Source: Oopsacas minuta
Lineage: Eukaryota > Animalia > Porifera
Length of the DNA: 64,000 nucleotides
NCBI GenBank assembly: GCA_024704765.1
Contig: JAKMXF010000299.1
Coordinates: 310,001 to 374,000 of the forward strand
Direction of reading: 5' to 3'
In this document: one piece after another, positions 822 to 59,814 of the stretch
Layout of the letters: every line of letters begins with the position of its first letter
Position numbering within the stretch: the stretch's first letter is position 1
The notes under the pieces: model-generated
What the model saw: the letters and a program-made list of their open reading frames with translations, nothing else
What the model was told of the DNA's origin: nothing
Database searches by the model: none
Program-made: the position numbers and the translations under genes

Positions 822-2147
822 ATGTTCTACATTGATAGCATAATCTTCTTTTGTATTCGCATATGGATATATTTCTTCATTCTCCCGACCGTGAAAATAC
901 TATTCTATATATTAGAATGTATTATCAATATTTCTAAGAGAATAACATTCTATTTACTTCCACAGCAAACTTTTCCATGTCGTATTTTTGAACGTGTTGA
1001 ATCTATGTATAACTACCTAGTAGGGGGTTATCGTAGGATTGTGGGAGCTATCTCTAACTGGATTCTCTCTGACAGTCCTAAATACATCGTTGCAAGGATA
1101 AAGGAACTAAAAACTCTATTATTTCTAATCGTATTAATGATCTGGTTTTCTAGCTCACTAACTACTGTCCTATTTGGTAATACTTATTTCTATTCTCCCA
1201 ACAAAAAGTTCGATTTTCCATTCTATTTTGACTACACATACCATGGATTACCTCTCACACAAATTGTCCCTTATGCATCTTCTAAAGAGATTATTCAATT
1301 TGAAGGCATCGAGCCTGCTACCATAATCCCACATGCTTTCATTGATCTGCAGGAATTGGACATCAAATTGAGTATCGGAGAATATTATGATGTTTCTATC
1401 AAGTTAGAATTACCGGAGAGTTATGCGAATCGTGATGCTGGTGTGTTTATGTTAAATCTCACTATGTACGCTGAAAACGCTACTCTAATTGCTACAGTTG
1501 GGCGTCCATTGCTTCTGAAATTTAAATCAAACTTTTTTACTTATATTCAAACCTTTGTTTTCTTTCCATTTTACTTTTTGGGTGTCATACAAGAAAAGCA
1601 ACAAATGCATAGCTTAATGTTTGAAAATTTCCAGGAAAATTTCAAACTACAGACTGAATCCATCTATGTATCCGTTTCAAATCCCAAAATCGAAATATAC
1701 GAATCTTCAATGCACTTTTCATTAAAACCACAGGGTCTTAATATGTTAGTACTGAACTGGCCATGGACAGCATGGCTTGTAATGATAACGTTAGTAGTCG
1801 TATCATCAATATTCCTATGTATTCTAATCTCACAAGCTATATTATTCATCTTAATAGATATAGTACATACTCGTTTACCTGAAGTAGCTGATATGCTACC
1901 GAGTAATGACGCCTTAATGCGCTCATTCCCTCCCTTACCTAGATACAGTAATGTTCCCCGTGTGCAAGAGGAATATCATACTATTGACGATGAAGATGCG
2001 AATGGTTTTATTAATATGTCACCGCTAAATATGAATGAAGACGCCATGACTCCACCCATTTCTCCACATGCTCCTGTTTACATCCCGAGGGAACCTGTTA
2101 CAGATACACTTGATTCTGATAATGAACGTTTACGTCAAAGACATTAG
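822..2147 (+). CDS. BSCL2: Seipin (lipid-droplet biogenesis ER membrane protein), intronless
   Basis: 441-aa ORF with hydrophobic TM segments flanking the seipin luminal domain (YDVSIKLELPESYANRDAGVFML, LKFKSNF..IQTFVFFPFYFLG..QEKQ, IEIYESSMHF, NWPWT). ATG is directly preceded by TTTTAG (816-821). Confidence 0.9.
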   Translation: MFYIDSIIFFCIRIWIYFFILPTVKILFYILECIINISKRITFYLLPQQTFPCRIFERVESMYNYLVGGYRRIVGAISNWILSDSPKYIVARIKELKTLLFLIVLMIWFSSSLTTVLFGNTYFYSPNKKFDFPFYFDYTYHGLPLTQIVPYASSKEIIQFEGIEPATIIPHAFIDLQELDIKLSIGEYYDVSIKLELPESYANRDAGVFMLNLTMYAENATLIATVGRPLLLKFKSNFFTYIQTFVFFPFYFLGVIQEKQQMHSLMFENFQENFKLQTESIYVSVSNPKIEIYESSMHFSLKPQGLNMLVLNWPWTAWLVMITLVVVSSIFLCILISQAILFILIDIVHTRLPEVADMLPSNDALMRSFPPLPRYSNVPRVQEEYHTIDDEDANGFINMSPLNMNEDAMTPPISPHAPVYIPREPVTDTLDSDNERLRQRH

Positions 2148-2297
2148 TCACAGCGTTGTATATGTGTATGTGAATTTTAGATTTTAATAGCACGTCTTTG
2201 TACACATGGAATTTTTGATTGAAGATTTGAATATTTGTATCAGAGTTTTATATATCTTGGCTTTTATTTTACTAATTTTACTAATAATTTCTTGCTA

Positions 2298-2629
2298 TAC
2301 AGTGTAACCTACACAAACTCGGCCTGTGGAAACGGTAAACATCTGGAAATTTTGTGAAAAAGTGCGAATTTCTAGTCCCATTCAAATGTACTTCTACAAA
2401 CGGGTAATTTGGCAGAAGGGGGGAACTTGGTAGCATTATTCGGCGTCCCCGTTAACCCGTTTCTAGGGCGTAACTAGCATTGAGGCAGCGGAGGCAACTG
2501 CTTTCTCGCTTTTTCGGACGTTGCCTCATCTCCCTACTGCAATCGCCATTAAATTGTGGCAAATATCCATCCTTGCCTCCTCACTCTAGCATCTCTAGTT
2601 ACGCCCAGCGGTTGTGGAGGTTACATGTA
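2298..2629. mobile_element. Tc1/mariner(pogo)-like MITE, family C copy 1, interrupted by a nested insertion
   Basis: TA|CAGTGTAACCTACACAAAC at 2298 and the inverted CGGTTGTGGAGGTTACATG|TA ending 2629. The internal sequence is collinear, in reverse orientation, with 5426-5600 and 62838-62995. Confidence 0.75.
2464..2608. mobile_element. Small hAT-like MITE nested in the family C MITE
   Basis: Perfect 12-bp inverted repeat GGGCGTAACTAG (2466-2477) / CTAGTTACGCCC (2595-2606). It displaces the right terminal inverted repeat (TIR) of the host element. No clean target-site duplication (TSD). Confidence 0.6.
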
Positions 2630-2663
2630 TTTATTCGATTTTTTATATTATCATCATATCCAA

Positions 2664-5417
2664 ATGAAGATTAGGAAAGAAATGGATATTCTGTTGTTAC
2701 ACAATTCTAATGGTGAATTACAAACACATCTACGCTCTCCTTCCTCTCATGGTATCAAAGATATACCAGAATATTTCCAAAAGCATTTTGAACTATTCAA
2801 AACTCATCAAAAATCATCTGACAATCCAAGTTACATTCAAGCATATAAACACACAATTGAGATTTTACTAATCAATCTAGATGCTGATACACTGCTAGAT
2901 AATAAAATTATAGAATTTCTTACGTTATGTCAACCAGCTCATTTATTTGCTCTCTGTATTCATATTTTGAAAAAGCCTGATAAAACTGTTCTTACTTATC
3001 AGAATTCTCTGACACTACTGCTTTATACTCTACAGCCAACCGAACTCGCGAAAGTTATCACCTCAAATATACATATATGCGGAAATACTCCGATTTCAAA
3101 CCAAATTGCTATTCTAAATCCAATACAGACATCTTTCATACAGAACCTATGTTCTATACCAGATCTTGTTATGAATAAACTTGCTAAAACTCTTGTAATG
3201 GTGGAATCTAATAAAGATTACAAACAATCACCGATTTATCCAGAGAACTTCTATACTCTTATTTCACAAGTAATATTCTGTATTCTAATCAAATCAACGG
3301 ACAATTCTGATATATTTATTCTGTTTTTCGCTTCTCTACTCAATCAAATTTGTTTATTGGGAAATGCGACTATTATTGCTCGATTTATTATTCAATTCGT
3401 GAACCGAAAAGCTTTCGCAAAACTTGATATATTGAAGGCGATAATATCAAAGATCTTACCACGTGGATTAGAAAAACTCTTGGAATCATTACTAACACAA
3501 TATTACACACCTAAATTCGGGAACACATCTATCTTTTCAAAATTTCTACTTGACCCCAGATCTTCTACTCGTGTTAAAACAGTACTAATCGATCGTCTCA
3601 TCATTTCTCGCCAATTTTCCGCGAAACAAAACCTTTTATTACACAACTTAATGCATTATATCTGTAATGAAGCTTCTGAACTGGGCGTTGAAGTACTTGA
3701 GACAGTGCTAACCGCATTCAAGTCAGAATTCTACGTGGATAGAATATCATTAGAACAACATGAATATTTGTGTAGAGTTATAATTCTCTGTGTAAGGTAT
3801 TACACTATAAGATTAGAACCAGACCATGGATATATTATTTTACAAGCTATAAAGGACGGTAATCCTAATAGAAAAGAAGATGAAGTAAGCCAAATTCCTA
3901 AAATATGCTACCCTAAGATTTTTCCTAATTATCCTCTCTTGCTTTTGACACAAAATGCCATTGAAATTCATCTAAAAAATACACGAACTGGTATCAAAAT
4001 TCATGGACAAGTAATAGGTGAAATACTGTGCGCTTGGCTCAATAATGATCCCTCAAACACTCTAAATTTTGGATTACCATCTAATGACCATACTGTTATG
4101 GAATTGAGAAATTTATTGACATCACAACATGAGAAACCTATTGTAACTGAATATGTAGATGTAACCATGGATGATTCTAATTCGTTCAATTTTAATTTGA
4201 TACCAGAACTACAAAAAATGTTTGAGCCTGAAAAACCTAATGAAATCGTATTTTCAGAAACGAATACTATATCAGCTGATGAGATAGATGCACTTATCCT
4301 ACCGAATACTGTAAAACCTGACAAGCCTCGGCCTCTTATAGAGATACTATCTGATAGCGATAATTCTGAGAGTGAAGATTTAAAACCATTTCCTTCTACA
4401 ATCGATACTCCTAGTCAAGATACCAAAAGTTACATAATTGGTATGGAGCCTATACCAGGGCCTTATTCATTGAGAGAATGTGTAGAATGGTTAGGAACTA
4501 ATGTTAAATCTAGTAATGAGGTGGATAATGTAAAGCGAATTGATGCCGCTTTGAATAAAGTAGAATCTTTTATAAGAGCATCTCCACATGATCTCAAGAT
4601 TTGGACTGGGAAGTTAGCTGAAATATTTTTGAATATCTCAAACGAATATTCAATAAAAGACATGCATATCCTGCGTTTAAATTCACTTGTCGCACTGTGT
4701 GTATGCAATCCTGTGGAAACTGCTAAATATCTTACTGCGGAATTCTACACTTTACATATTGTTATGCACGCGCGTTTTGATATTCTCGTCTCAATTGAAC
4801 GTGCTGCAGGTGAGCTTGCTAACATAAGTGAAAGCAAGACAACACACACACATTTTAAGATCCCTCTCACGAAATATCAACAGACCAAAAAGCAACCAAA
4901 AGTATGGGAAGATATTATCAAAGAGCGACTCAAATTAAAAACACGAATTATCTCATCTGCACGGAAGCAAGCTAAAATAACTGAGAATGTTTTCGGTGAC
5001 GTAGTTGGATATTTTTTCTATCCTCTCTTGTATAACTTTGATAAATCACTTGCTACTATGAATTTTTTCGGTGATGACGTTTGGCTATTTTGTGCTCTAC
5101 TTAAGACTATCGGAAGCTTGATTATATATGCTCAGGGGACAATCGCACTTAGAAAAATGACTTCTGCACTTTTCGAGTTTTTAATCGCTATTAAAACAGT
5201 AGGAAATTCTCTGGTTAAACAAGGTATGTGTTTTTGTATTCTCTGTATACTCGAAGTTACTCCTGCGTATTATATACTACCAGATCTATCTCCAGAGATG
5301 GAGGAATTGACTGAATACCTACAAGATATTTTCTTGAAAGATGCAGACCAGATAACGTTAAGGATGAGTAATGATACTCTCCATCAGATTAGTTTATTGT
5401 ATAAACAGGTCTATTGA
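2664..5417 (+). CDS. TELO2: Telomere length regulation protein Tel2 (TTT complex), intronless
   Basis: Acidic SDSDNSESEDLKPF segment, PYSLRECVEWL, FIRASPHDL, LRLNSLVALCV.NP, RFDIL..IERAAGEL, ENVFGDVVGYFFYPLL..FD. The ORF-track start at 2556 is a GTG inside the MITE; the likely ATG is 2664 (or 2682). Confidence 0.88.
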   Translation: MKIRKEMDILLLHNSNGELQTHLRSPSSHGIKDIPEYFQKHFELFKTHQKSSDNPSYIQAYKHTIEILLINLDADTLLDNKIIEFLTLCQPAHLFALCIHILKKPDKTVLTYQNSLTLLLYTLQPTELAKVITSNIHICGNTPISNQIAILNPIQTSFIQNLCSIPDLVMNKLAKTLVMVESNKDYKQSPIYPENFYTLISQVIFCILIKSTDNSDIFILFFASLLNQICLLGNATIIARFIIQFVNRKAFAKLDILKAIISKILPRGLEKLLESLLTQYYTPKFGNTSIFSKFLLDPRSSTRVKTVLIDRLIISRQFSAKQNLLLHNLMHYICNEASELGVEVLETVLTAFKSEFYVDRISLEQHEYLCRVIILCVRYYTIRLEPDHGYIILQAIKDGNPNRKEDEVSQIPKICYPKIFPNYPLLLLTQNAIEIHLKNTRTGIKIHGQVIGEILCAWLNNDPSNTLNFGLPSNDHTVMELRNLLTSQHEKPIVTEYVDVTMDDSNSFNFNLIPELQKMFEPEKPNEIVFSETNTISADEIDALILPNTVKPDKPRPLIEILSDSDNSESEDLKPFPSTIDTPSQDTKSYIIGMEPIPGPYSLRECVEWLGTNVKSSNEVDNVKRIDAALNKVESFIRASPHDLKIWTGKLAEIFLNISNEYSIKDMHILRLNSLVALCVCNPVETAKYLTAEFYTLHIVMHARFDILVSIERAAGELANISESKTTHTHFKIPLTKYQQTKKQPKVWEDIIKERLKLKTRIISSARKQAKITENVFGDVVGYFFYPLLYNFDKSLATMNFFGDDVWLFCALLKTIGSLIIYAQGTIALRKMTSALFEFLIAIKTVGNSLVKQGMCFCILCILEVTPAYYILPDLSPEMEELTEYLQDIFLKDADQITLRMSNDTLHQISLLYKQVY

Positions 5418-5425
5418 TTGAATCT

Positions 5426-5600
5426 TACAGTATAGCCTCCACAAACGGGGTGTTAGGGACGCTGAATAAGGCTACCCCGTTTCCTTGTTTCTGCCTAATT
5501 CTCCGTTTGTGAAAGTTCATTTATATGAGCCTATGAATTCGATTTATTTTTCACTTCGTATCCAGAAGTTTTCCGTATCCACAGGCCCCGTTATTTCAAT
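5426..5600. mobile_element. MITE family C copy 2
   Basis: TA|CAGTATAGCCTCCACAAACGGGG ... CCACAGGCCCCGTT; aligns over about 160 bp with the reverse complement of 2320-2460. Confidence 0.7.
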
Positions 5601-5690
5601 TTATATCAATAAATATGCAGAAATATTATTTTTGTTCGATTTACTCGTTGAAACTTTTATTTAATAATTTATCATTAGTGGCTTATTTCG

Positions 5691-7232
5691 ATGATTCGAC
5701 GCTATGAAACAAGTCATGATTACCCTTCATTTCACTCTAATGAACACACAGTATCACTTGCTCTTGTCGGGGAAATAAAACAAGCTCTACTCAACCACAA
5801 CTTCAAATTCATCCTAGATGCAACTGCCTATCTGCTAATATTATTCACTTCAGCTCGTGAATTGGTTCGTTCATGTGTACTTCTATCCAGCACATATAAC
5901 CACCTTCCCAAGAACATAGTAGAAATGATATTGGCTAGAATTGAACGGAAATCAATGCTAATCGAGTCACCAGTATTAATCCCGCTATCAATTGAACGTA
6001 CTATGTATTTCCTGGACACTCAATCTTGGAATAAAGCAGGTAATTGTGCTATCACACATTTAGATAAAAGTCTCAAACATAATCCCCTATTGAAAACTTA
6101 TGCTGGACTAACACATTACATTCTATGGCAAAAAGATAAATTATACGATGCTGAATCGACAAGAAAGGGTATGAAAATTGGTAAATCAAACACTCATCAA
6201 CAACGAATAAAAGATATACTAAAATATTTGGATGACATTTATGCTAACAAGGGAGTATGGGATATTCCATTACATTTGCATATGAAGTTATTAATTGAAG
6301 AGAGAAATGATATACAGAGTGCATTGAATATCGCTAAGCAAAATTTGGACAGTAATAAAGGAGACCTAAATGCATTAGTAACATTAGCGATTTTCTACAT
6401 AGATTTCAATGAATCAGATTTCTATAACAGAGATGAATTGATTAGTATTCTAACTAGAATACACTACATCGATCCTTCGAACTATTTGATGATAAGTCTA
6501 TGTCAGGAAACTGGGATTAGTGAAGAGAATTCTAACTTTATTGTTTCCATAGCAATGGAATTTCTTGACTATCCTTGTAATAAAGATGAACATCTAATGT
6601 GGGAATGTTTATACGGTGCTCTTACTGAATTGAGTAATTCTGTGTTTGAGAAAGTTTTAGCTGAAGAATGGGCAGATAGGAGATCATGGTGGATACCACT
6701 ACATTTTGATATAGATAATCTAATTCAAACTTTCACGATTAATTTAGTGTTATCTTGCTATAAGGCCTTAGTACTTAACACGCTGAATTGGGGCGGTACT
6801 AATCCATATACATTAAAAGCTAAGATGCTTCTCGATCAGCTGACAGATGTGGATTATAATTTAGAGTGTATTTCTAAATTGGTTACATTAGTAGTAGGTG
6901 AATTTATCCCAGAAGAGAAAAGTGATGATTGTATTATGTTAGATTTCTCGAAAGATCTCACGGATGAATCTGAGGAGATAGGGATAACAGATGACGTGGA
7001 ATTGATACCTGTACCTCTCGCGAAAAAGACCAAGTTCTTCCAGCAAGAGGATCTAGCTGCGTATTGCTATATATCAGATCAGTGTTTGGTAAAACAGGAG
7101 ATAGAACGATTATTCTATTTAAGGAGGTATAAAGCTATGGGGCCTCCTAACAACGAGACTGAACCAATGGAATCTGATAATGAATGTTCTCATTTAAGTT
7201 TAGATAATAATGGTTCTGATAGTAGTCAGTAA
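5691..7232 (+). CDS. TAF1A: TBP-associated factor RNA polymerase I subunit A (SL1 complex), intronless
   Basis: 513 aa. The motifs EFLDYPCNKDEHLMWECL and EEWADRRSWWIPLHF...LSCYKALV resemble TAF1A (LDFAGC...AW; EEWNSRKNWWPGFHF...ACEKAFV). Confidence 0.75.
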   Translation: MIRRYETSHDYPSFHSNEHTVSLALVGEIKQALLNHNFKFILDATAYLLILFTSARELVRSCVLLSSTYNHLPKNIVEMILARIERKSMLIESPVLIPLSIERTMYFLDTQSWNKAGNCAITHLDKSLKHNPLLKTYAGLTHYILWQKDKLYDAESTRKGMKIGKSNTHQQRIKDILKYLDDIYANKGVWDIPLHLHMKLLIEERNDIQSALNIAKQNLDSNKGDLNALVTLAIFYIDFNESDFYNRDELISILTRIHYIDPSNYLMISLCQETGISEENSNFIVSIAMEFLDYPCNKDEHLMWECLYGALTELSNSVFEKVLAEEWADRRSWWIPLHFDIDNLIQTFTINLVLSCYKALVLNTLNWGGTNPYTLKAKMLLDQLTDVDYNLECISKLVTLVVGEFIPEEKSDDCIMLDFSKDLTDESEEIGITDDVELIPVPLAKKTKFFQQEDLAAYCYISDQCLVKQEIERLFYLRRYKAMGPPNNETEPMESDNECSHLSLDNNGSDSSQ

Positions 7233-7321
7233 TAAACAGTTTTATACAATTTTCGATGGTATTTTCATTGGAAAATTAAGGTAATTAACTTGAATATTAG
7301 TTTGTATGTTTGTTTATCATA

Positions 7322-7460
7322 TACTATTAACTCCATTATAACGAGCACGGATGTATCGAAGTCTAAGATTGTACAAATATGGTCCTAAACGATTACACTT
7401 TTATACCGAAGTAATTATCGTGGTCTCTTAAGCTTCGATATAACGGGAATAGGCTGTGTA
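7322..7460. mobile_element. pogo/Tigger-like MITE family A
   Basis: Carries the family-diagnostic internal motifs TTGTACAAATATGGTC and CTTAAGCTTCGATATAACGGG; TIRs are decayed. Confidence 0.65.
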
Positions 7461-7497
7461 TTACAAATACTTTTTGTATATTTTAAAGATTAGATAA

Positions 7498-10400
7498 ATG
7501 TCTCAATCCTACAAAGATACTATCATTGAAGTATGGCATTTATTGAGTCGTACATACCTCTATATGAACGCTAAGATAAAGATTCACCTCAGATCAAAGT
7601 ACGCATACAATCTTCGTGATACATACTCTCAATTAACTATCATAGAGAATACTTTACCTAACATGCAGATTCACCCTCTGAAGAGTATGACGTATGCTCA
7701 CTCGATTCTAGATAGGACAAATAAACAGATATTTCCTTTAGAGGAAAATTTATTGAGTACACCTGGCCAGCTGTTCCTGGCTATTGGGCAGATCGGTACA
7801 GGGAAAACTTGGCTTGCACGTCATATAAGTACCTTATGGGCTAATGACCTGATTAATGAAGGCAAAAATATTTTGATATACATTGACTGTGAACTTCCTG
7901 AAGTAAAATCTGCTAAAGATATTCAGACTTGCATATCTTCATTGCGCACGAAAGGTACAAATTTTGTGGATTATTTTGAGCATTTATTCGTGAAAGATGG
8001 TCAAAATCTCATATTTATAATAGATGCATATGACGTATTGCTACGTTATGTTCCTAATAGCCCTCTACACGAACTTGTTAGAAGGAAGATCTTATCAAAA
8101 TCTTCTATTTTGATACTCTCTCGACCTTGTGTGCACTTCTATAACGAAATGAATACAACTTATTTGAACTATACCAAGCTTGAAGTTCTTGGTTTTTCTA
8201 GCAAAATTTGCAATGAATATTTTACCAAATCCTCAATTAAATTGCTAGAAGGATCACAAGCTGTTTTTGTATTTTTAAACATATTTCCTGATCTCAGACA
8301 ATTCGCAAGGTTCCCTCTCATAGCATTCTCTATTATAAAATTAGTTAGTATTGAGAATCTAGAACAATTCGTATCTGTTGATTACATAATGAAACATATT
8401 TGTGTGATAATTATCAACCAACAGCTTAGCCATTATTTAACCGGTGATATCAAATCTCAATACTTGAATATTGTAAGTTTAAATAGCGTATCGAGAAGTA
8501 AATTCCATTCTCTGGGGCATTTATACAAAACTGCTTATCAAGGATTACTCGACTCGTTCAATACAGTACAACAAGATATTCCAACGTTTCATGAAGGGTT
8601 TGCACCGGATGGCATGGGTATTTATTGTACTAATTTCATACAAGTTAATAGCGAATGGAAGCCTCGGTACACGTTTATTAACTTGATAACACAGGAGTTT
8701 CTCGCTGCTTTATACACCAAAGGAAATTTGAAGTCAGGCCAGGAAGAAAGCTATGAAAAAACATTACCGATCTTGCAAAAGAAAACCATTCCCCACTTCA
8801 TGATTCTTGGGTGTAGTAAAGAGTTATTATTAAACGAAGAAGGCAAAGATATTTTCCATTTCTATTTACCTCAACTCAATAATTCCCTCACAATATACGC
8901 TCTATTGCTCAACATTATTATTGAATGCGGGTTTGTACACTATCAGAAAATCAGTGCTACCTTATTATTCCCTTCAAATACAATTGAATTATTAGATTAT
9001 CCAATGGAAGGATGGATATTGAGAGGTGTATCATATTTCCTCAACAAGATTTCGAATTTTACTTCTTTGACCTTTTCAAATTGTTCCATTACAGACCAAA
9101 TTTTGTACTTTTTGATTACAAACATGAATATTAATTCAAACATAACTTTTGTTAATTTACAAGGTAACAAACTCACAGATTCTTCAATCCCGATTATCCG
9201 TAACTCATTTCGTCATATTCTATCTTCTCTACGTAAACTTGACTTAAGTAATAATTCTATAGACGCGAGCCAGGTTATATCTCTCGAATCAGATTTCCCT
9301 CAAATCGAGTTTATCTCACACCAAACTATTCCTCAAGAAATACTCAGTCGAGGAGAAGAATTTGTTTATCAGTACCAACTAGCTTGTAACGAAGGCAGTC
9401 AACAGATTAAGTTCTTTCGTCTTATGGTAGTTGGTTCTGAGGGTGTAGGTAAAACTAGCTTGTTAAAAGCCTTGAGAAATCAACCGTTTGAAGGGAAAGA
9501 AGTTTCTACTGATTTTATAGAAAAAACTGATATTACTATTACGGAATTGAGTAATGACTGGAGTCAGAATCTGAGTTTTAAAGAAAGGCTCAAAGAAACA
9601 CGAGATGATATTTTAGCTCATATAACTGTCAAACGTGTCAAATCACTCACAAACCTGTCAAATTTGGCAGATAATACAAATCTCAGTGAATTGATACTTC
9701 AACCTGAGAGTAACACTGATCTTGATACCGGCCAGATTGATGAAAATACTAACTTAAATTTTACAAAATCTGAGCCAGATTTAGTGCTAGAAAATGATAA
9801 AATTCCAGAAGAAACAAAATTGGAATCTCCTACTATAGAATCTCAACCAGAGGAGATTGATACTCCAACAGTTGAAATTGAACCTGAAATACCTGAAATA
9901 AAAATAGATACGAATGATCCAAATGAAGAAATCTCAAAAATTGATCCTCCCTTTGTTTCCTCCAGCATGCACTTATCAAATTTACCACTTAAAAATATAC
10001 AAGAACACTGGAGTAATCAACGTACTATACTACCAATAGAGTTCTTCACTGTTTGGGACTTAGCTGGACAATCCTATTTCTTCTGTATGCACTCCCTATT
10101 CCTGACCCCCAGGGCTGTATACTTAATGCCAGTCGATTTATCAGTTAACCTAAAAGAGCCTGTGTTACAGAGAAAGAGGGAAACGGGCAGATTAGACAGA
10201 CGTGAAATAAAAGGTAAAGTAACACATCTTGACATTATACAATACTGGATAATGACAATATATTCTGTGGCTAAATCTACTTCAACTGAGGTATATGAAT
10301 GTAAATCTCGTATTATTATTGTATTCACAAAAGCTGATCTAGCAGATGACCCTGTAGAGAAAGCTGCAGCTGATTACAAGTTAATTACAGACTCGCTATC

Positions 10401-50223: not shown

Positions 50224-53200
50224 ATGCATCATCCTTTGAGCAGACGAGGCTCTCAGGAATATATAAAGAGACCAAAGTCAGCTCAAGGCATTCTCAAGTG
50301 CCCTTCACCACTAACTATATGCTCGTTTGACGCAGATTTTCATTCACAAAGATCAACAGATTTAAGCCCACTTATTGATTATAATTTTTCACCACTCGAT
50401 CAAGTAAATCGTTCTAATTCACTCTCAATCGGAGGACTTCGACCACGTTGCTACACAAGTTCAGGAATACACCGCCCTACAAATCAAGCCCCCACAAACA
50501 AATCACATCCTCTACAATCCGCATTTCGTTCTCGGAGTATGAGTACACAACAGAATATGTTTACTCGTTTGCATGACCGTGAGCCTTTAGGTCAACGCAC
50601 ATCACTTCCAAGCCTAACCAATCTAAAACTCCGTCCTAATAATTCTTATATCAGCCAAACATTTGCTCCTTTATTTAAACACAGTATTTCTCTATCTGAT
50701 AACGATATTTCCCTCCTCTGGTCACGGAATAAAACGCAAGGGGAGAATATAGACACAGTTGATACATATTCTCTACGAGTAAAGCGATGGTTCTCTTCAC
50801 GAGCTGAGAGATTAAATGCTACAATGGCACCTAAAGCACATCCTTTCTCGCATCTTCTCTCCTTCAAATATGTGCAGTTTTCATGGTATAATGATACCTG
50901 TTATACTCGGTAAGTACAAGAATTTCAAATATTAATTAAATTCGTTTGTACGTATATAACAATATCTTTCATTGTATTGTAATTTGTCTATATTTTCTAG
51001 ATCAGCTGATAAATGTCGCGGTTGTGAAGGAGATTTCTTCCAACAAGAGCCCTGTCTCCTCCACGATAACAGACTCTGGCATTACGGCTGTCTACGGTGT
51101 GATGAGTGTAATCATGAAATTTTACCTAATACACCATATCTCTGTCCTGTTGATACAGATGTTAAACTGTCAGAAGTCAAACCTCTCTTGACAGGTACTC
51201 AGTCGTTAGGTAGAAAACGGAAATATTCTTTCTCCCCTGAATACTGGAAGGGAGTAACTCAGGTCATTTGTATGAAATGTGTTCCTACCTGTAATTCCTG
51301 TATTATGTCTATTCTGGAAAACCACGTTATGGCTCTGGGCAAGCATTGGCATCGTGAATGTTTCAGATGTTCTGCTTGTGGAGATGTAAGTTATTGCAAT
51401 ACTGTAGGTTCGGAATGTAATAACCCAGCGGTTCTCCTATGCCATTTTACCACATTCTGTGGACCCCTACTATCGTCCGTGGACCACCAAGGGTCCATAA
51501 ACCCTAGGTTGAGAATCTGACGGTATACGTACCAAATGTCCGTAATAAACTTAATTTTTAGGAATTGAATATTGGGATTATTTAGCCAAATTCACCATTA
51601 ACTTTGACAATTAATTATTTAGTGTAATCTGTATAATAAGTTCTCCACCATAATATATCTTATTAATATTCTTGATTTAATTAGACTTATCGTATGACAA
51701 ATAATTCTAAGATTGATTAGGTTATGAAAACGTTGAACCTTTTGAGGTTCAATTAGTTGGTCGTTTGAACAATGCGCTCTGTTAATTCTGATAATTATCA
51801 AAGACTTGGTTTATGATTTATTAACCTGATAATCGATAATCTTTAACGTGTACTGACGGAATGCCATATCTTATGGCGAATTCAATATATCTAAATAATG
51901 CATCGAAGCTAAATTTACCGTATTGTAATCAATGAATTTTGAAAGTAGGGAAATTGTTTTTAATGGTATTAATAATTAACTATCTAGATTACATCTAAAA
52001 TGCATCTAATGATTTTTAAATTTAGCAAACGTTGCGGTTTGCTGACATCTTGTATGGGGCTGGGTCTCAGTGTAATTGGGTGAATTTATGCTCGGAACAA
52101 AATTTGGTTGTAATTATATAATTATATCTTGAAATATTCTCCTCAGGGCATTTTATAATTCACTATTAACTCATAATCCCACCTCTTAGCGTCTCGGAGA
52201 TAATTCTAAAGTATATGGTAAGAAAGGAGACGCGTGTTGTTCAAGATGTATTCTTCCTCTATTCGGGCAAGCTCTAATGGATCCTAAACTGCTACGAAGT
52301 GCTCTTAGTCTTGAATCATCAGATGATGATACTCCAGTAGATGACAACCAAGCTCCAACCAACTTTGGAATTTGTAGAGAAAATAGTCTTCTATTTTCAA
52401 GTGTAACAGAAATGGCATCTGCGTTTGCTTACGCTCTATCAGTAAGTTACTTAATTATGCATTATCAGTTCGAAAATATTGAAATTCTGGTTTAGAACTC
52501 GCTACAAATGTGGACAAAAGTTTTAGGATAATTATTCTAAAATGGTTGTACAAACCACGTTTTCAGCATAATCGATTCGTAATAATCTCTTCTAAGAATT
52601 CTAAGTATTATACTTATCACCTAACTAGTATTAATCAGATATATATATATATATATATATATATATGGACATCCTGTATTAACTTGAGAATATATTCAAA
52701 CTAATTTTAATGAATAATTATAATACAGCACTACCATCCTAATGCTAATCTGTACTAATCACTTAAAGGCCACAAGTTAGTCATTTGATTAATCAAACGT
52801 AATTAAAGTATTTGCATAATTTTACAACACATTTATTTGTATTGTGTAATAAGGTATGGGTAGGTAAGGGTTATCATCTAACCGGCTCGATTATTATTAA
52901 TATATACATTCTGTATTTAGGTCATGTTAATTTATGATTACTTGGAAATGTACAGTCGTAAAGTATGTAGACCCACTGTCGTAATTCATTATCTGCATCT
53001 GGTACCCTAACTTCTTCATCCGAAGCATTTCGGTTACACGGACACTTTCGACAAGATTCATTTGTGGTCATTTCTCAATAATTATTAAAATTACACCTGT
53101 CTTAGCATGTTACATTCCTGTTAAGATTACGTAATCCTTTTTTGAGATTACAGAATACTGTGTTCATATTAATTAATAAATACGTATTTGACCATAATAT

Positions 53201-56200
53201 TAGTGTAAAAATAGAATATTACTTTTCAATGTTCTACAGGAGTGAGTAACCGAGTATCGATTTCACTGACATTTTCTATTTTTTCATTCTACTTTCTACT
53301 TTCTCTGGAAATTTCATCCAACTCTTCTTTAAAAGTCAATCCATCTTTGTTTGTATCTTTGTTATGTATCCATCTCAAATATGACATTCTAGATTTAATC
53401 TCTCTTTCTCGTTTCTGTTGCGACAAAATGTGTTTTTCTCTTTCCCTCTTCAATTTCATTTCTTCTTTCAAATATCTTTCCTGGTTGACTTTACCCACTA
53501 ACCACTCTGAGAAACTAGCTTTAACTACATTCTCTCTTTTCTTTACTATTTTACTTTCTAAGCTTACTATTGGCGTTGAGGGAAACTTTGACATTTTCAA
53601 AATCACTGCGGGATCAGAGAATGTTAACATTGTCTGTGTGTCGGGGATAAATTCCTTTGCTCTTTGAGGGTCAAACCATCCGTAATTGAATATATTCTCA
53701 GGTGTAGCTGACTTAATTTCGTAGCTTTTAGGAGAGATACTCCTCTCTGACCTGTTTCTATCCCAGCTATCACATTCCTAGAGGGTAAATACAACATGAC
53801 AATTGTGGTTTGTAAATTTGTATTCTTGCTAATCTTAATTACTTTCTTTTTGCTTCAACGTCGAAATATGCAAAATAAACTCTCCATAACAGATTGTGTA
53901 AGCTATCCTTAAGTTACACTCATACCAAATGTTCATAGATATATGAATACCACACTATTTCCAGGTAAGTAATTACCCGTCGGCAAATTTTTGGAATTTT
54001 TGCATATCCAAAAAGTGTGCAAATGTTGAAATCTTTGGAGGAATTTGGTAAAACTTAGTGCCCTGAATTGAACTAGACCAAAAAGTGTATATAAAAAGTA
54101 TTATTTAACAATCTACGAACCTTGATCGATATAGGATTATCATAGACTGCTAGATATCGTCTCTGTAACTTCCCTTTCATCCATGCAGGGTTGGTAGAGT
54201 CCATCGTTTGATGCGCTAATCTACAACTCAAATCTCTTGCTTTATACGGACTGTAATCTTTCTGCCAACGATCTACTTGATTATACTTCTGTAGATTCCA
54301 AGAGCAAAAATTCAGACTCTGCTCACATTTCTTCGCTCCGTAAATTCTCGTCAAATCCAATGCAGTTTTACCCTGACTATCCATGAGGATTATGTCAGCA
54401 CCCTTATCAATTAGTATACACAAGCATCTCCATTGATTAGACCTTGCAGCTGCATGCAGAGCTGTCCAATTGGCTCGAGTATGTGCATTTATATCCACAT
54501 GTGTAAGGCGTATTATCTTCTCTAGTAAGCGTGAATGCCCACGATGTGCCGCCATAAATAGTGCCATGAAAGCCCTGAAAATACTCCGTTCATCAGAATT
54601 GGTTATATTATAATCTTCTATGTCTGATATCGTGCCTTGGAAAACATCGATTAAGACGTATTCCCACATTTTCCATGGCTGTAACATGACACGAGCTCTC
54701 GGCACTATTTCATGCTGAGCTACTGTACAGTGATTCAGGAGATCTGCTTTGTCTAAATAGTTAAGACGATAGAGTTCTGTTGGAATACCGAGATCTTGTT
54801 CTATCATTACTTTTACTTCGCTAATTTTCAGATTATTGTGCACATTGTGTAGCTCAACAACTTCTCCATGTGGCAATACAATTCTTATAGTGTATACGTG
54901 TGTCTTTTTAACGTTAGTGAACATCTAATATATGTTGATATGTAAAATTATATTAGTTGCCCTAGTGTGAACAAGGCATCAAAAATTGGGTCGATAATAA
55001 ATGCATTATTTATTTCGCTGATAATATTCACAGAATTTTCACAACATCATGAAAATCCACATAGACGCATTTTATGAAATATATTTCCAGTTATTTCTAA
55101 CTTATGTTTAACTTTCAACCAATTAATTAAAATGTTTTCTAATCATTCGATAAACTCGTAGACGATAAATCTAACACTATCTCCTAATTGAACCCATTTA
55201 TCAGCTGTTCTTATACCTAATTTAATGTTTACAATATACAATTTTTCTAAAGAATACTGCGGTAATTAAATATTATTGATTCATTGACTATTCTAGGAAC
55301 ATAGTGAGAAGAATGAACAGATTTCATTACCAGAAACTCATAGGAATTATAGCGAAAATTTGAATGCGTTTCTTACACATAACAGTCTTGATAGAAAGTG
55401 AGTACAAATATTTGGAAATATATAAAAATTAATGAAATTTGTATTAATTAGACATTTAAAAGAGAGGAGAAGACAGAAAAACGCGATGCTAAATCTCACA
55501 AGCAGTTACAAGAGTGAGAAGGGAGTAGCTAAACCTATAGTAGTGCCTACAGTCCCTACGTCTCTATCCTCTTATAATACTATTATCAACAGTCATGAAG
55601 GAAGATCACTGGTAATAATTTAGAAGTGATTGCTATAAATTATCGGGGATCTAGTTATACAACTTGGCCGACGTATTTCTCGAATATTTACTTACTTTAT
55701 ATCTCTTTCCCTAGTTAATAGACTACTGTATAGAGAAATATGAAATAGAGAAAATCTACTTCATTAGTGATATAGATGGTCTCAAGGATTACGATACAGA
55801 GGAATTGGACTGGCTGGTATTAGTACGCAAGTTATACAAGTTATACATTGCCCCGGAGTGCAAACCAGATTTACTTATAAACTTGCCTAAAGATATTACC
55901 GATGAGATTAGAGGGAAAATTAAGGCTAAGAACTGCCCAATGGGTTAGTATATACTAATACTACTCTAATATAGGATGTATATTTTAACTGACGTATTCA
56001 TTTAGGAATATTTGATAGAGCTCGTGAATTTGTGTTGAATCAAGTTGACAAAAATGTTGTTAAGCATTTCTTAAAAAGTTCGGAGGGTTCTCAATACCTG
56101 AAAGCTCTGGTATCTTTTGATAATATATCTCGGCAAGTTATAAGGTAAGCTGTAGTACTATCAGTGAATTAAACAGTCCAATTACCTTGATCAAGGATTT

Positions 56201-57729
56201 CTATTTATTATCCACTTTTTATCTTGTAGGACGATAAGTAAAAATGTAAACAGATTAGAGATAGAATTGAATGTGATAGGGTATGATAAGAGGCACGACA
56301 CAAAGAAGCCAACAGGAAAATCAAAGTATTATGTAAGAATATACAAGATTATTGTTGTGTATCCGAGAAATACATTACTAGTTACAGGCATAATTAATTC
56401 AAGAAAAGTCTCTGCAAGTTATATATGTCCATGTATCTCCAGATGTGTATAAGAGACTACTTTTCGCTCTACATTTCCTCGCTATAATAACTGCAGCAAA
56501 ATGTATATTGAATACAATAATCGATATAAGGAATATACATACTAATATTTTTCTTCGATGACAATAGCTACTAATTCGTCAAATATTGATCGGAGAAAAT
56601 ACACGAAATTTATAAGGATCTGTATTCAAAATACTGATCTCTATTCGCAATTGTTTAGTGCTATTGTTTCAATGAATTTTAAGGAATTTACACTAATAAA
56701 TAGTTGAATATTAATATCTGAAAAATTGCATTAAATTGAGTAAAACATAATAGTATCTTTAGAGTAAAATTCTATTTTCTTTAACTGGTTGTCATCTTTT
56801 ATTGTCCATATGAGTTAAATCCTTTTAAGAATCTGAGATTTTTAACAATTTGCTAGTTTGTTTGATAGCTATAAGAATCAAAACCTGAGAAGATATAGCA
56901 ATAACTGTATCATTGAGAAAATTATTGTTATCCATTGTACTTTTATATTACATGATATTATTGTAATTAATATATTACGTCATTATTACATGCAGGTATA
57001 CGAGATTGAAGTTAGGATTGGAGAATATTTGTTCACAGTATTCAGAGCTTATAAAGAATTCTACAATTTACACGAGAATCTTAAGAAAGAGTTTCCTAAA
57101 CACTTACCACCTTTCCCACACAAGATATATCTAAGGAGAAGTGAAGTGAAGAGTATTGCTAGACAACGTGCAAGTGACCTAAACCAATACTTACAGGTTT
57201 GAATATATAATTTATAATGTTTCTAATACCCACCATACATGATGCAGCTTTGTTCCATGCAAATAGTTCATCCAACAAAGTTACATAGTGTATGGTGATT
57301 TTCTCTGTAACTTTGTATGTAGAATTTTGAGGCAAATTTATTATACGCAACATTATTAAACTGTGTGTATATATATACACGTATATTGCCTTGCTTCTTA
57401 CAATAATCTTATTTCTAGATAGCCAATTCAAATTGTAGACAGAAAAAAAATCCCTTTCAAAAAATTGGGGAAATGATTTAACTATGTAGAGGATATGACC
57501 TTGGTCAACACCATTAATAGACGGTCTACAAAAATTTTCCTTTCTAATAATTGTTCAAAAACCTATATTAATATATGAAATTCTTTAGGAGATCTTAAAG
57601 AAACAACCAGAAATCTCCAAACACCAAGAATTACTAACATTCATAAAACAAACAGAAACTGACGCAAAAGATGAAGAATTCAATAAATTCTTAATTCTAC
57701 GTGGAGTCAGAAGAGCGAACAAATTTTGA
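50224..57729 (+). CDS. Multi-exon protein with architecture disordered N-terminus, LIM, LIM, RGS, PX (798 aa as assembled)
   Basis: Exons 50224-50909, 51001-51385, 52190-52441, 55297-55397, 55452-55611, 55715-55943, 56006-56144, 56230-56332, 56996-57196, 57589-57729 join with GT-AG and matching phases (2397 nt). LIM2 is completed across an intron (CSACGD|RLGDNSKVYGKKGDACCSRC). RGS: LIDYCIEKYEIEKIYFISDI..LYIAP...INLP..IFDRARE..FLKS. PX: YY|VYEIEV..TVFRAYKEFYNLHENLKKEF..LPPFP..QRASDLNQYLQ. Confidence 0.75.
51426..51519. mobile_element. hAT/Charlie-like MITE family B (intronic)
   Basis: CAGCGGTTCTC ... GGTTGAGAATC with internal GTGGACCCC / GTCCGTGGACCACCAAGGGTCCAT. Confidence 0.6.
52639..52666. 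repeat. (AT)14 microsatellite
   Basis: Uninterrupted AT run, read directly from the sequence. Confidence 0.95.
53289..54924 (-). CDS. ANKRD60: Ubiquitin-like plus ankyrin repeat protein (ANKRD60-like), 2 exons, nested antisense in the LIM-RGS-PX intron
   Basis: Exons 54924-54121 and 53777-53289 join in phase 0. GIPTELYRLNYLDKADL and RAFMALFMAAHRGH resemble ANKRD60 (GIPFNLQRLQYLDEGVL, RAFVALYVASHRGH). Ankyrin TALHAAARS, GKTALDL. Confidence 0.8.
53930..54025 (+). ncRNA. Speculative spliced-leader-RNA-like element
   Basis: CAG|GTAAGT donor (53965) inside a 5-bp GUAA-tetraloop hairpin; Sm-site AATTTTTGG (53986-53994); 9-bp 3' hairpin (53999-54023). Could instead be a decayed hAT remnant. Confidence 0.25.
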
Positions 57730-58441: not shown

Positions 58442-59449
58442 TTAACACTCTTTAGCATCAGCTATACCACCAGGAGTAATAGCATAGCTAGCCTCATTCT
58501 CAGGCATGTCAGGACTATCGTATACTTTAGCGATTCGTATCTCCCCTCTGCCCTTTCGTAGACTGAGCCTTGTTGTAGAGGCGTGTGCTAATATATGTCC
58601 TCCTATCGGCTTCTTGGGATCCGCTTGAAATGACATTGTCGCGCCAGGATCAGCTGTCATTTGGTTTGTGATAAAAACAGCAACATTGTATTCTTCTGAT
58701 ACTTTTTGTAAGCGTGATAACATCTGAGCTAATTTCTGTTGTCTGTCAGCTAGCTCTCCTCTCCCACTGAAATCTACACGGAATAATGCCATAACAGAAT
58801 CTACGATTAGAAGTTTGAATATCCCTGGTTCTTCATGGAATTTAGCAGCTACATTATCAATGAGCTCCATCTGATGCTCGCTAGTGTAAGCTCTTGCGTA
58901 TAAAACGTTATCTAACATAGCAGTATGATCTAGATTGAATCTATCAGCGATATCTTTCAGTCGATCAGGTCTAAATGTATTTTCTGTGTCGATAAAAACT
59001 ACCTTCCCTCCTCCATAGCCTTTCGCCCCAGGCATTTGTGCTGTTACGCATAATGTGTGTGAGATTTGCGTTTTCCCTGTTCGGAATTCACCAAATGCTT
59101 CTGTAATGCTCATGCTCTCAATTCCACCTCCACATAATTTGTCTAGTTCCAATGAACCAGTTGTTATACGAAATACTTGCTTTCTCTTATCACTGTAGAC
59201 TAGAGCTGTTAGAAAATCCGAATTTGACATCTTCGCCACGGCCTCTTTGATCTTGTCAACTTTCGCTTCAGACAGACCTTTAATATTCGCCATTTTCTTT
59301 CGAGTTGTCATTTGCACTCCTTTCACAGTACAAATCCCTGCTACTTTCAATTTTTTCAAATCTGCTAGATTAATTCCATAGCTTTGCAACATTTCTACAT
59401 CTTGATAATCCAATTCACTCTCTTCTCCATTGCGTACACACTGTTCCAT
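58442..59449 (-). CDS. DMC1: Meiotic recombinase DMC1, intronless
   Basis: [81 protein letters not shown] are DMC1-diagnostic. ATG at 59449. Confidence 0.96.
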
Positions 59450-59814
59450 CAATTAATTGAAAATATCTGAAATAGTTTTATAATTATTATGCAAATATTT
59501 GCTTATATCTCAGTCAGAACCATTCAAATTCATCTCTTCACTCCTGCTGTATTTCATACGTATTTTATTCAAATACTTTCATTGGAAATGTTGTTGAGAA
59601 TTTAAATTTTTAAGGGAACGTAATTTAATCCAAATACTATTGTAATGATTTTATCAGCGCACTGGCTTGGTTCATAATAAGGACAAATCCATACCAAAAC
59701 CCATGAATTAAGTAATCAAATTGGTCGCTACATTTTCATAACACCATATGTCTCTATAAAACATATGATGCTATGAATAATGACTCTAATAAATGTATTT
59801 CTCTACAGGGAAGA

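What the first reader, a model, noticed from the sequence alone, without database searches (positions are those of the whole stretch)
50224..57729. Unfamiliar signalling scaffold: LIM-LIM-RGS-PX in one 10-exon gene
Seen: ten exons join with canonical GT-AG and matching phases into a 798-aa ORF that the ORF track shows only in fragments. The second LIM is completed only by splicing 51385 to 52190, and that exon leads on to the RGS and PX exons. Established: RGS+PX occurs in SNX13/14/25, but with N-terminal TM/PXA and C-terminal PXC domains, not LIM domains. Inference: a protein linking actin/adhesion (LIM), G-alpha GAP activity (RGS) and phosphoinositide membranes (PX). I do not recognise this architecture.
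Basis: partly seen in the sequence, partly recalled or inferred. Interest (0 to 1): 0.8.

Follow-up and report, generated by a model that had tools for sequence, protein, structure and literature searches.

The report
Glass-sponge LIM-LIM-RGS-PX scaffold gene
The ten exons form one expressed glass-sponge gene for a protein with two LIM zinc fingers, a divergent G-protein-regulator (RGS) domain and a lipid-binding PX domain; other eukaryotes have the same combination, and I found no paper describing it.

Summary

- **Exon model.** All ten exons have GT-AG borders and matching phases. They sum to 2397 nt, which is 798 codons plus a stop.
- **Doubtful junction.** The 52441->55297 junction skips a 2855-nt intron that holds a spliced antisense gene. 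RNA-like contigs of run X4 show this junction from both sides.
- **Conservation.** Two related glass-sponge-like genomes (L002, L003) keep the exon lengths, phases and splice sites. Exon 4 has no ATG, follows an in-frame TAG, and changes mostly at third codon positions. It is therefore an internal coding exon.
- **Not unique to this genome.** A 709-aa protein from an environmental mRNA contig (P0018) scores LIM x2, RGS and PX in Pfam. Genomic contigs of at least two further eukaryotes (L005/L007, L011) carry the same order.
- **Separate from SNX13/14/25.** There is no TM, PXA or PXC part, and PXA-RGS genes lie elsewhere in this genome. The RGS is RGS2/RGS4-like and the PX is PI3K-C2alpha/SGK3-like.
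- **Function is inferred.** The most likely role is a membrane-docked RGS scaffold. The sponge copy has lost several G-alpha contact residues and the canonical 3-phosphate arginine, so both GAP activity and PI3P binding are uncertain.
- **Literature and limits.** I found no description in the papers searched.

The parts
50224..50909 (+). Exon 1: start codon plus a 228-codon Ser/Pro/Thr-rich N-terminal region with no Pfam domain; ends in phase 2.
   Evidence: The reading frame opens at 50218 and the first ATG is at 50224. The donor reads GTAAGT. L002 keeps the region at 59% aa identity, with the ATG at the same place. Pfam finds nothing.
51001..51385 (+). Exon 2: LIM1, which carries a long insertion in its second zinc-finger loop, and the first zinc finger of LIM2.
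   Evidence: Pfam LIM at E 4.4e-10 in 2 stretches. The best solved match is the paxillin LIM. L002 is 80% identical. X4 shows the RNA joint 51385->52190.
52190..52441 (+). Exon 3: the second zinc finger of LIM2, then a linker whose last 20 codons are almost invariant in three genomes; ends in phase 0.
   Evidence: The sequence carries the C-C-x2-C ligands that complete LIM2. L002 and L003 are 76% and 67% identical. In the last 20 codons, 11 changes against L002 are synonymous and none are non-synonymous. The donor reads GTAAGT.
52442..55296 (+). Intron 3 (2855 nt), which hosts a complete antisense gene.
   Evidence: X4 loose ends join 52441 to 55297. The only blocks conserved with L002 and L003 lie within 53215-54925 and belong to the minus-strand gene.
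54121..54924 (-). Nested gene, exon 1: ubiquitin-like fold (weak match) plus ankyrin repeats, ANKUB1-like.
   Evidence: Pfam Ank_2 at E 6e-9 and ubiquitin at E 0.087. The minus-strand GT..AG joint between 54120 and 53776 is seen in X4. L002 and L003 are 80% and 74% identical.
53289..53777 (-). Nested gene, exon 2: coiled-coil tail with a weak CCDC34-like match, ending at the stop codon.
   Evidence: The frame is continuous with exon 1, giving 162 codons. Pfam CCDC34 scores E 3e-4, below its cut-off. L002 and L003 are 58% and 52% identical.
55297..55397 (+). Exon 4: 101-nt internal coding exon with no ATG, preceded by an in-frame TAG.
   Evidence: It is 101 nt in all three genomes and 88-94% aa identical. 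Nucleotide changes fall at third codon positions in 10 of 13, 9 of 13 and 15 of 20 cases. The 60 nt upstream are only 27-37% identical. X4 loose ends appear on both sides.
55452..55611 (+). Exon 5: basic linker and the first helix of the RGS domain.
   Evidence: L002 and L003 are 72% and 81% identical. X4 shows the joint 55611->55715. The exon's end lines up with the start of the RGS of P0018 and RGS4 (read by eye).
55715..55943 (+). Exon 6: core of the RGS domain.
   Evidence: Pfam RGS scores 21.1 bits here, and 23.8 and 20.1 bits in L002 and L003, over profile positions 17-83 of 117. It is colinear with the RGS of P0018. A profile of the orthologues hits only RGS22 in the PDB, at E 0.011.
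56006..56144 (+). Exon 7: C-terminal helices of the RGS domain.
   Evidence: It aligns with P0018 residues 482-520. X4 shows the joint 56144->56230 in 3 contigs.
56230..56332 (+). Exon 8: linker and the first strands of the PX domain.
   Evidence: It aligns with P0018 residues 572-588. The X4 loose end behind 56335 equals 56999-57024. The intron position after the K-Y-Y codons is shared with L005, L009, L010 and L011.
56996..57196 (+). Exon 9: core of the PX domain, with R-A-Y in place of the usual R-R-Y.
   Evidence: Pfam PX at E 4.1e-12. The best solved matches are the PX domains of PI3K-C2alpha, SGK3 and nischarin.
57589..57729 (+). Exon 10: last PX helix, a short conserved tail (E-E-F-N-K-F-L) and the stop codon.
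   Evidence: L002 and L003 are 91% and 74% identical. The tail motif is shared with P0018, P0004, P0005 and P0015.

Best explanation
**Shown.** Positions 50224-57729 (+) hold a single ten-exon gene of the glass sponge. The genome matches Oopsacas minuta in scaffold number and size. The mRNA joins the LIM exons to the RGS-PX exons across a 2.9-kb intron that contains an independently spliced antisense gene.

**The product.** It has 798 aa, in this order:
- a low-complexity N-terminus;
- two LIM zinc-finger domains;
- a conserved linker;
- a divergent RGS domain;
- a C-terminal PX domain with a short tail.

There is no transmembrane, PXA or PXC part. The protein belongs to a conserved LIM-LIM-RGS-PX family, for which I found no name, that also occurs in other eukaryotes.

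**Inferred mechanism.** The PX domain docks the protein on a phosphoinositide membrane. The RGS domain binds an activated G-alpha subunit there and, if still catalytic, speeds its GTP hydrolysis. The LIM pair ties the complex to a protein partner such as a cytoskeletal or adhesion component. This resembles SNX13 in principle but arose by a separate domain fusion.

**The sponge lineage differs.** Its PX reads R-A-Y, like the R-T-F of PI3K-C2alpha, so a lipid other than PI3P is likely (PI(4,5)P2 is my guess). Its RGS keeps the key Asn (RGS4 N128) but has lost N88, D163 and R167. G-alpha binding may therefore persist with weak or no GAP activity.
For: **Gene structure**
- Exon arithmetic and splice sites fit.
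- X4 shows joints or loose ends for E2-E3 through E8-E9, including 52441->55297 from both sides.
- X4 exon bins have depth 1600-8000 and intron bins about 25. The unspliced path past 52441 has depth 5.6.
- The O. minuta project produced RNA-seq, DNA-seq and Nextera mate-pair libraries.

**Conservation**
- All exons, with the same lengths, phases and GT-AG sites, are found in L002; E3-E10 are found in L003.
- E4 shows the codon-position pattern of a coding exon.
- The intron holds no other conserved plus-strand block.

**Family**
- P0018 scores LIM x2, RGS (64 bits) and PX in Pfam on an intronless 2348-nt mRNA contig. It is colinear with the window's exons.
- L005/L007 and L011 carry the same order on 1.6-2.6 kb of DNA.
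- In the genome that carries P0013, a called LIM ORF lies 10 kb upstream of the PX ORF on the same strand.

**Domain affinities**
- The RGS of P0018 is nearest to RGS2/RGS4.
- The PX is nearest to PI3K-C2alpha and SGK3.
- The sponge copies read R-A-Y where the relatives read R-R-Y.

**Context in this genome**
- It encodes many G-alpha genes.
- Separate PXA-RGS genes lie on contig C210.
Against: - No full-length cDNA was seen. The junctions come from short contigs of one run whose type is not on record, and that run comes from the same sample as the assembly.
- E1-E2 and E9-E10 have no RNA support here.
- The sponge RGS exon stays below Pfam's cut-off on its own and did not appear in the genome-wide RGS scan.
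- By sequence alone it matches no solved RGS. The orthologue profile gives only a weak RGS22 hit.
- The contact residues N88, D163 and R167 (RGS4 numbering, roles from memory of the RGS4-Gi-alpha1 structure) are replaced.
- The PX lacks the canonical second Arg.
- Nothing was tested biochemically, and LIM partners are unknown.
- The joined protein was not scanned or folded.
Confidence: 0.72

Rival explanations
1. One gene, as above, but the RGS is a non-catalytic pseudo-RGS and the PX does not read PI3P. On this view the sponge protein is a LIM-based adaptor or sorting-nexin-like scaffold with no direct role in switching off G-alpha.
For: The sponge RGS scores 20-24 bits against Pfam, compared with 64 bits for P0018. 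The equivalents of N88, D163 and R167 are replaced in all three sponge genomes. The PX reads R-A-Y in all three. From general knowledge, not every RGS domain has GAP activity; those of the GRKs are described as inactive.
Against: The equivalents of N128 and E87 are kept. The RGS exons are under clear purifying selection, with 27-33 synonymous against 16 non-synonymous codon changes in E6. The genome keeps many G-alpha genes.
Confidence: 0.22
2. Two neighbouring genes, a LIM-only protein (E1-E3) and an RGS-PX protein (E4-E10), whose transcripts are joined only now and then by read-through splicing. The antisense gene between them would mark a true intergenic space.
For: A complete, expressed antisense gene lies between E3 and E4. 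A conserved Met exists in exon 5. Contigs cannot give isoform proportions.
Against: - E4 has no ATG, is closed upstream by a TAG in all three genomes, and evolves as coding sequence in the frame set by E3.
- E3 has no stop before its donor, and the unspliced continuation is about a thousandfold shallower.
- No conserved alternative first exon exists in 54926-55296.
- Distant relatives encode LIM, RGS and PX in one mRNA or one compact gene.
Confidence: 0.04
3. An assembly or annotation artefact: a chimeric scaffold brings unrelated LIM and RGS-PX exons together.
For: The assembly does contain a small adapter-derived insertion in the E8-E9 intron.
Against: Contigs of DNA-like runs cover the stretch apart from the skipped repeat at 52629-52675: X1 12.9-kb and 11.5-kb records lie either side of it. 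The same gene order occurs on 381-kb and 519-kb contigs of two other assemblies.
Confidence: 0.01

Closest known systems
SNX13 (RGS-PX1), SNX14 and SNX25: the SNX-PXA-RGS-PXC sorting nexins (review PMC7956473)
   Same: An RGS domain directly followed by a PX domain in one polypeptide. The idea is also shared: a regulator of G-alpha held on a phosphoinositide membrane.
   Different: The window gene has no N-terminal transmembrane helices, no PXA and no PXC (Nexin_C) domain; only 46 residues follow exon 9. It has two LIM domains instead. Its RGS resembles RGS2/RGS4 and its PX resembles PI3K-C2alpha/SGK3, not the SNX13-type domains. The genome has separate PXA-RGS genes on contig C210. This is therefore an independent fusion and not an orthologue.
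P0018, a 709-aa protein from an environmental mRNA contig, and its genomic relatives L005/L007 and L009-L011 (unidentified eukaryotes, no name)
   Same: The order LIM-LIM-RGS-PX, colinear alignment, the same C-terminal tail motif, and the same intron position inside the PX domain.
   Different: - Identity to the sponge exons is only 26-41%.
- P0018 and L005 have a helical N-terminal region where the sponge has a low-complexity one.
- Their RGS is canonical (64 bits) and their PX has R-R-Y.
- Their genes have no nested gene and only short introns.
R4-type RGS proteins (RGS2, RGS4, RGS18, RGS1)
   Same: They are the best solved matches of the family's RGS domain. The equivalents of N128 and E87 are kept in the sponge.
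   Different: R4 RGS proteins are small, with little more than the RGS domain. The sponge domain replaces N88 (Lys), D163 (Asn/Ser) and R167 (His/Ser).
PX domain of PI3K-C2alpha (also SGK3 and nischarin)
   Same: It is the best solved match of exon 9, at 36 bits. Both lack the second Arg of the R-R-Y motif: R-T-F in PI3K-C2alpha and R-A-Y in the sponge.
   Different: The protein context differs entirely (lipid kinase against scaffold). The lipid preference of the sponge PX is untested. That PI3K-C2alpha PX prefers PI(4,5)P2 is from my memory, not from a tool.
Paxillin-type and LIM-only proteins
   Same: Tandem LIM zinc fingers. The best solved match of exon 2 is paxillin, at 43.6 bits.
   Different: There are only two LIM domains. 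LIM1 has a second loop of about 53 residues where P0018 has 17. No LD motifs or other paxillin features were found.

Membership tests
LIM domain (PF00412) | Pfam score above the gathering cut-off. | tested here: met
   Exon 2 alone scores 40.1 bits against a cut-off of 22.9, in 2 stretches.
LIM domain (PF00412) | Eight zinc ligands per domain in the pattern C-x2-C-x16-23-H-x2-C-x2-C-x2-C-x16-21-C-x2-C/H/D. | tested here: met
   LIM2 shows the full pattern, read across the E2/E3 junction from the two exons separately. LIM1 has all ligands, but its last loop is about 53 residues if the C-M-K-C pair is used; that pair aligns with P0018's C-E-N-C. This loop length is atypical.
RGS domain (PF00615) | Pfam score above the gathering cut-off. 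| tested here: inconclusive
Exon 6 alone, covering profile positions 17-83 of 117, scores 21.1 bits against a cut-off of 23.9; L002 scores 23.8 and L003 20.1. The homologue P0018 scores 64.1 bits.
RGS domain (PF00615) | G-alpha contact residues (RGS4 E87, N88, N128, D163, R167; roles from memory of the RGS4-Gi-alpha1 structure). | tested here: not met
   In the sponge, E87 and N128 are kept, while N88 is Lys, D163 is Asn or Ser, and R167 is His or Ser. P0018 keeps E87, N128, D163 and R167. The set is only partly present in the sponge.
RGS domain (PF00615) | GTPase-accelerating activity on a G-alpha subunit. | not testable with these tools
   This needs a biochemical assay. Candidate substrates exist in the genome.
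PX domain (PF00787) | Pfam score above the gathering cut-off. | tested here: met
   Exon 9 alone scores 46.9 bits against a cut-off of 21.6.
PX domain (PF00787) | Canonical PI3P-binding residues (p40phox R58, Y59, K92, R105; numbering from memory). | tested here: not met
   The R58 equivalent is Ala in the window, L002 and L003 (R-A-Y). The relatives P0018, P0004, P0005 and P0015 have R-R-Y. Tyr, the Lys after the P-x-x-P motif and the later Arg are present.
SNX-PXA-RGS-PXC subfamily (SNX13/14/25) | N-terminal transmembrane helices and a PXA domain. | tested here: not met
   No exon has a PXA match. The genome's PXA matches lie on contigs C210, C221 and C14, not in this window.
SNX-PXA-RGS-PXC subfamily (SNX13/14/25) | C-terminal PXC (Nexin_C) domain after the PX. 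| tested here: not met
   Only the 46 residues of exon 10 follow exon 9, and they have no Pfam match.
SNX-PXA-RGS-PXC subfamily (SNX13/14/25) | RGS immediately upstream of PX. | tested here: met
   Exons 5-7 carry the RGS and exons 8-10 the PX.

The most novel reading that the evidence does not exclude
LIM-LIM-RGS-PX is an old and so far undescribed eukaryotic protein family. It would have arisen by a fusion of RGS and PX independent of the SNX13/14/25 lineage, been kept in glass sponges and several other lineages, and be missing from the usual model animals. In glass sponges it would have been retuned: a PX without the 3-phosphate Arg and an RGS with altered G-alpha contacts. The retuned protein would couple heterotrimeric G-protein signalling to LIM-bound cytoskeletal partners at a non-endosomal membrane of the syncytial tissue.
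Probability: 0.3. Interest if true: 0.6.

Novelty: new variant of a known kind. Interest (0 to 1): 0.45.

Why it matters
- **A second route to an RGS-PX protein.** The RGS-PX pairing, known from SNX13/14/25, has been assembled at least twice with different partner domains. This adds a LIM-linked version to the regulators that could switch off G-alpha at membranes.
- **Relevance to glass sponges.** These animals have a compact genome reported to lack key metazoan core genes (PMC10280926). The gene is a conserved, expressed signalling scaffold that can be tested directly by lipid binding, GAP assays and LIM partner searches.
- **A lesson for gene models.** The case documents a host gene and a nested antisense gene conserved together in three genomes. 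ORF-based or compact-genome gene callers would probably split such a gene in two.

Tried and rejected
- **RNA runs.** The look-up of sequencing runs listed no run on record as RNA. I laid all four runs anyway, and X4 behaved as RNA.
- **Word-index protein search.** P0018, searched whole and as residues 395-709, returned only itself. The public annotation of this gene and annotated full-length relatives could therefore not be seen.
- **ESM Atlas.** The look-up of P0018 gave no usable hit.
- **Metagenome scans.** The search for related loci failed with an 11-sequence alignment, which had no conserved stretch. With P0018 alone it found nothing. A two-sequence alignment gave 4 loci.
- **L004.** This contig (GC 46%) shows only the PX exon. 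Its upstream ORFs have no Pfam match, so it says nothing about architecture.
- **Literature.** Four searches for LIM, RGS and PX together, including with Dictyostelium, found no description. A 2010 survey lists LIM as a PX-associated domain in a single unnamed protist protein. The GPCR-evolution papers checked do not mention it.
- **Identity of the other eukaryotes.** The organisms behind P0018, L005 and L011 could not be determined. A dictyostelid-like origin for the AT-rich L005 is only my impression.
- **Left out.** All searches were done exon by exon, by reference.


Full report
**1. What the sequence shows**

The window is AT-rich eukaryotic DNA with short introns. The exons are:

| Exon | Coordinates |
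|---|---|
| E1 | 50224-50909 |
| E2 | 51001-51385 |
| E3 | 52190-52441 |
| E4 | 55297-55397 |
| E5 | 55452-55611 |
| E6 | 55715-55943 |
| E7 | 56006-56144 |
| E8 | 56230-56332 |
| E9 | 56996-57196 |
| E10 | 57589-57729 |

All nine introns are GT..AG and the phases fit.

Pfam, scanned exon by exon, gives:
- LIM in E2, E 4.4e-10 in two stretches;
- RGS in E6, E 4.4e-4 (21.1 bits over profile positions 17-83 of 117, so below the 23.9-bit cut-off on its own);
- PX in E9, E 4.1e-12.

LIM2's first zinc finger ends E2 and its second (C-C-x2-C) opens E3. The second LIM therefore exists only after the 51385->52190 splice.

**2. The weak point of the model, and how it was tested**

The proposed intron between E3 and E4 is 2855 nt long and holds minus-strand ORFs with ankyrin repeats and a weak CCDC34-like match. 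In a compact genome that arrangement suggests two separate genes. Three lines of evidence argue for one gene.

*(a) RNA.*
- No run is on record as RNA. Of four runs from one sample, X4 nevertheless behaves as RNA.
- Its exon bins have depths of 1600-8000 and its intron bins about 25.
- It shows GT..AG joints at 51385->52190, 55611->55715 and 56144->56230.
- For the critical junction it shows two reciprocal loose ends. The 14 letters behind 52442 equal window 55298-55311, and the 15 letters before 55297 equal window 52427-52441. Both are unique in the window.
- E4-E5, E6-E7 and E8-E9 are seen the same way.
- The unspliced path beyond 52441 is a contig of depth 5.6.
- The genome has 365 contigs and 61.46 Mb. 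That matches the published Oopsacas minuta assembly, whose project produced RNA-seq, DNA-seq and Nextera mate-pair libraries.

*(b) Conservation.*
- The PX exon retrieved fragments lying on 519-kb and 381-kb contigs of two other assemblies, L002 and L003.
- All ten exons are present in L002 at 59-94% aa identity. E3-E10 are present in L003, where the locus is cut at its 5' end.
- Exon lengths are the same apart from two small in-frame indels in L003 (E3 264 nt against 252; E5 163 nt against 160). Phases and GT-AG sites are the same.
- E4 is 101 nt in all three. It has no ATG, follows an in-frame TAG, and is 88-94% identical in protein.
- Its nucleotide changes fall at third codon positions in 10 of 13, 9 of 13 and 15 of 20 cases. 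The 60 nt upstream are only 27-37% identical.
- The last 20 codons of E3 show 11 synonymous and no non-synonymous changes against L002.
- E4 is therefore an internal coding exon read in the frame handed on by E3.
- Within the intron, the only blocks conserved with L002 and L003 lie in 53215-54925 and belong to the minus-strand gene. The suggested micro-exon at 52921-52962 is not conserved.

*(c) An independent full-length relative.*
- P0018 (709 aa) is encoded without introns on a 2348-nt environmental mRNA contig.
- Pfam scores it as LIM x2 (69.6 bits), RGS (64.1 bits) and PX (51.2 bits).
- It aligns colinearly with E2, E6, E7, E8, E9 and E10 of the window.
- Compact genomic versions of the same order exist in an AT-rich eukaryote, where L005/L007 carry LIM, RGS and PX within 2.6 kb.
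- They also exist in a eukaryote of GC 46-49%, where L011 carries LIM2, RGS and PX on 1.6 kb; L009 and L010 are partial.
- All of these share the sponge's intron position between the K-Y-Y (or K-F-Y) codons and V-Y-E-I inside the PX domain.
- In the genome that carries P0013, a called LIM ORF lies 10 kb upstream of the PX ORF on the same strand.

**3. What the protein is**

*N-terminus (E1).* It is 228 codons long, rich in Ser, Pro and Thr, has no Pfam match, and is 59% conserved in L002.

*LIM pair.*
- Paxillin is the best solved match.
- LIM1's last loop is about 53 residues, against 17 in P0018. This assumes that the C-M-K-C pair, which aligns with P0018's C-E-N-C, supplies the last ligands.
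- The insertion is conserved in L002.

*Linker.* The stretch from the end of E3 through E4 to the start of E5 is the most conserved part among the three sponge genomes. It has no counterpart in P0018 and no Pfam match.

*RGS (end of E5, E6, E7).*
- P0018's RGS is closest to RGS2, RGS4, RGS18 and RGS1.
- I mapped RGS4 numbering through that alignment. The roles of the residues are from my memory of the RGS4-Gi-alpha1 structure.
- P0018 keeps E87, N128, D163 and R167, and has Lys at N88.
- The sponge copies keep E87 and N128 but have Lys at N88, Asn or Ser at D163, and His or Ser at R167.
- The sponge exon alone matches no solved RGS by sequence. A profile of the orthologues hits only RGS22, at E 0.011.
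- This is a real but divergent RGS domain.

*PX (E8-E10).*
- The best solved matches are PI3K-C2alpha, SGK3 and nischarin, not SNX13/14/25.
- The three sponge genomes read R-A-Y where P0018, P0004, P0005 and P0015 read R-R-Y. PI3K-C2alpha reads R-T-F at the same place.
- From memory, the second Arg (p40phox R58) holds the 3-phosphate of PI3P, and the PI3K-C2alpha PX prefers PI(4,5)P2.
- Only 46 residues follow E9. They carry a tail motif (E-E-F-N-K-F-L) shared with the relatives.

**4. Relation to known families**

RGS followed by PX is the mark of the SNX-PXA-RGS-PXC sorting nexins (PMC7956473). This gene has no transmembrane, PXA or PXC part. The genome has separate PXA-plus-RGS genes on contig C210, at 409947-411240 and 414785-416053. 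The RGS and PX here also resemble other subfamilies. It works like an RGS-PX protein in outline but is not a member of that subfamily. It is best read as an independent fusion.

Four literature searches found no description of a LIM-RGS-PX protein. A 2010 survey lists LIM as a PX-associated domain in one unnamed protist protein. The architecture may therefore already sit unremarked in databases, and I could not query InterPro.

**5. Most likely mechanism (inferred)**

- The PX domain anchors the protein to a phosphoinositide membrane.
- The RGS domain engages an activated G-alpha. The genome encodes many G-alpha genes.
- The LIM pair binds a protein partner.
- In the non-sponge relatives the residues fit a PI3P-bound, GAP-competent protein.
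- In glass sponges both the lipid pocket and the G-alpha surface have changed. Purifying selection on these exons is nonetheless clear. This points to a retuned function more than to a decaying one.

**6. Limits**

- No full-length cDNA was seen.
- All RNA evidence comes from short contigs of one run whose type is not on record.
- E1-E2 and E9-E10 lay outside the 6000 letters given to read laying.
- The organisms behind P0018, L005 and L011 are unknown.
- Under the operators' rule the spliced protein was never joined, so no Pfam scan, homology search or fold of the whole 798-aa product was made.

**7. Verdict**

The functional interpretation is plausible but weaker for this lineage. Novelty is a new variant of a known kind. 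Interest is moderate.

Noticed in passing
window 53289-54924 (-): A complete two-exon antisense gene is nested in intron 3 of the LIM-RGS-PX gene. Exon 1 is 54121-54924 and exon 2 is 53289-53777. It encodes about 430 aa: a weak ubiquitin-like match, ankyrin repeats (ANKUB1-like) and a coiled-coil tail with a weak CCDC34-like match. Its own GT..AG splice is seen in run X4, and the nesting is conserved in L002 and L003.
   Followed up: partly
window 56441-56459: A 17-of-19 match to the Nextera mosaic-end adapter sits in the E8-E9 intron. The contigs of all four runs lack 14 letters at 56443-56457. This looks like an adapter remnant built into the assembly, and it has no effect on the coding model.
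   Followed up: partly
L002 8826-9959 (-) and L003 8327-9472 (-): In both related genomes the E8-E9 intron holds a further antisense ORF of 377-381 aa with no Pfam match. The window's intron is only 663 nt and lacks it.
   Followed up: no
window 58442-59452 (-): An intronless 336-aa Rad51/Dmc1-family recombinase gene (Pfam Rad51, E 5e-115) lies tail to tail just downstream. L002 keeps it in the same place and has a second Rad51-family gene 2 kb further on.
   Followed up: no
G000:C288:239985-240341 (-): A 366-aa open frame elsewhere in the genome has the PX most similar to that of P0018 (41% over 123 residues). In size it resembles the PX-only relative P0015 (367 aa). It may be a PX-only sister family that shares the C-terminal tail motif.
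   Followed up: no
G000:C210:409947-416053 (+): Two PXA-plus-RGS genes lie in tandem. They are probably the true SNX13/14/25-type sorting nexins of this sponge.
   Followed up: no
window 52629-52675: A simple repeat, (TA)n-like, in intron 3 is where the contigs of all runs break. Read laying skipped it.
   Followed up: no
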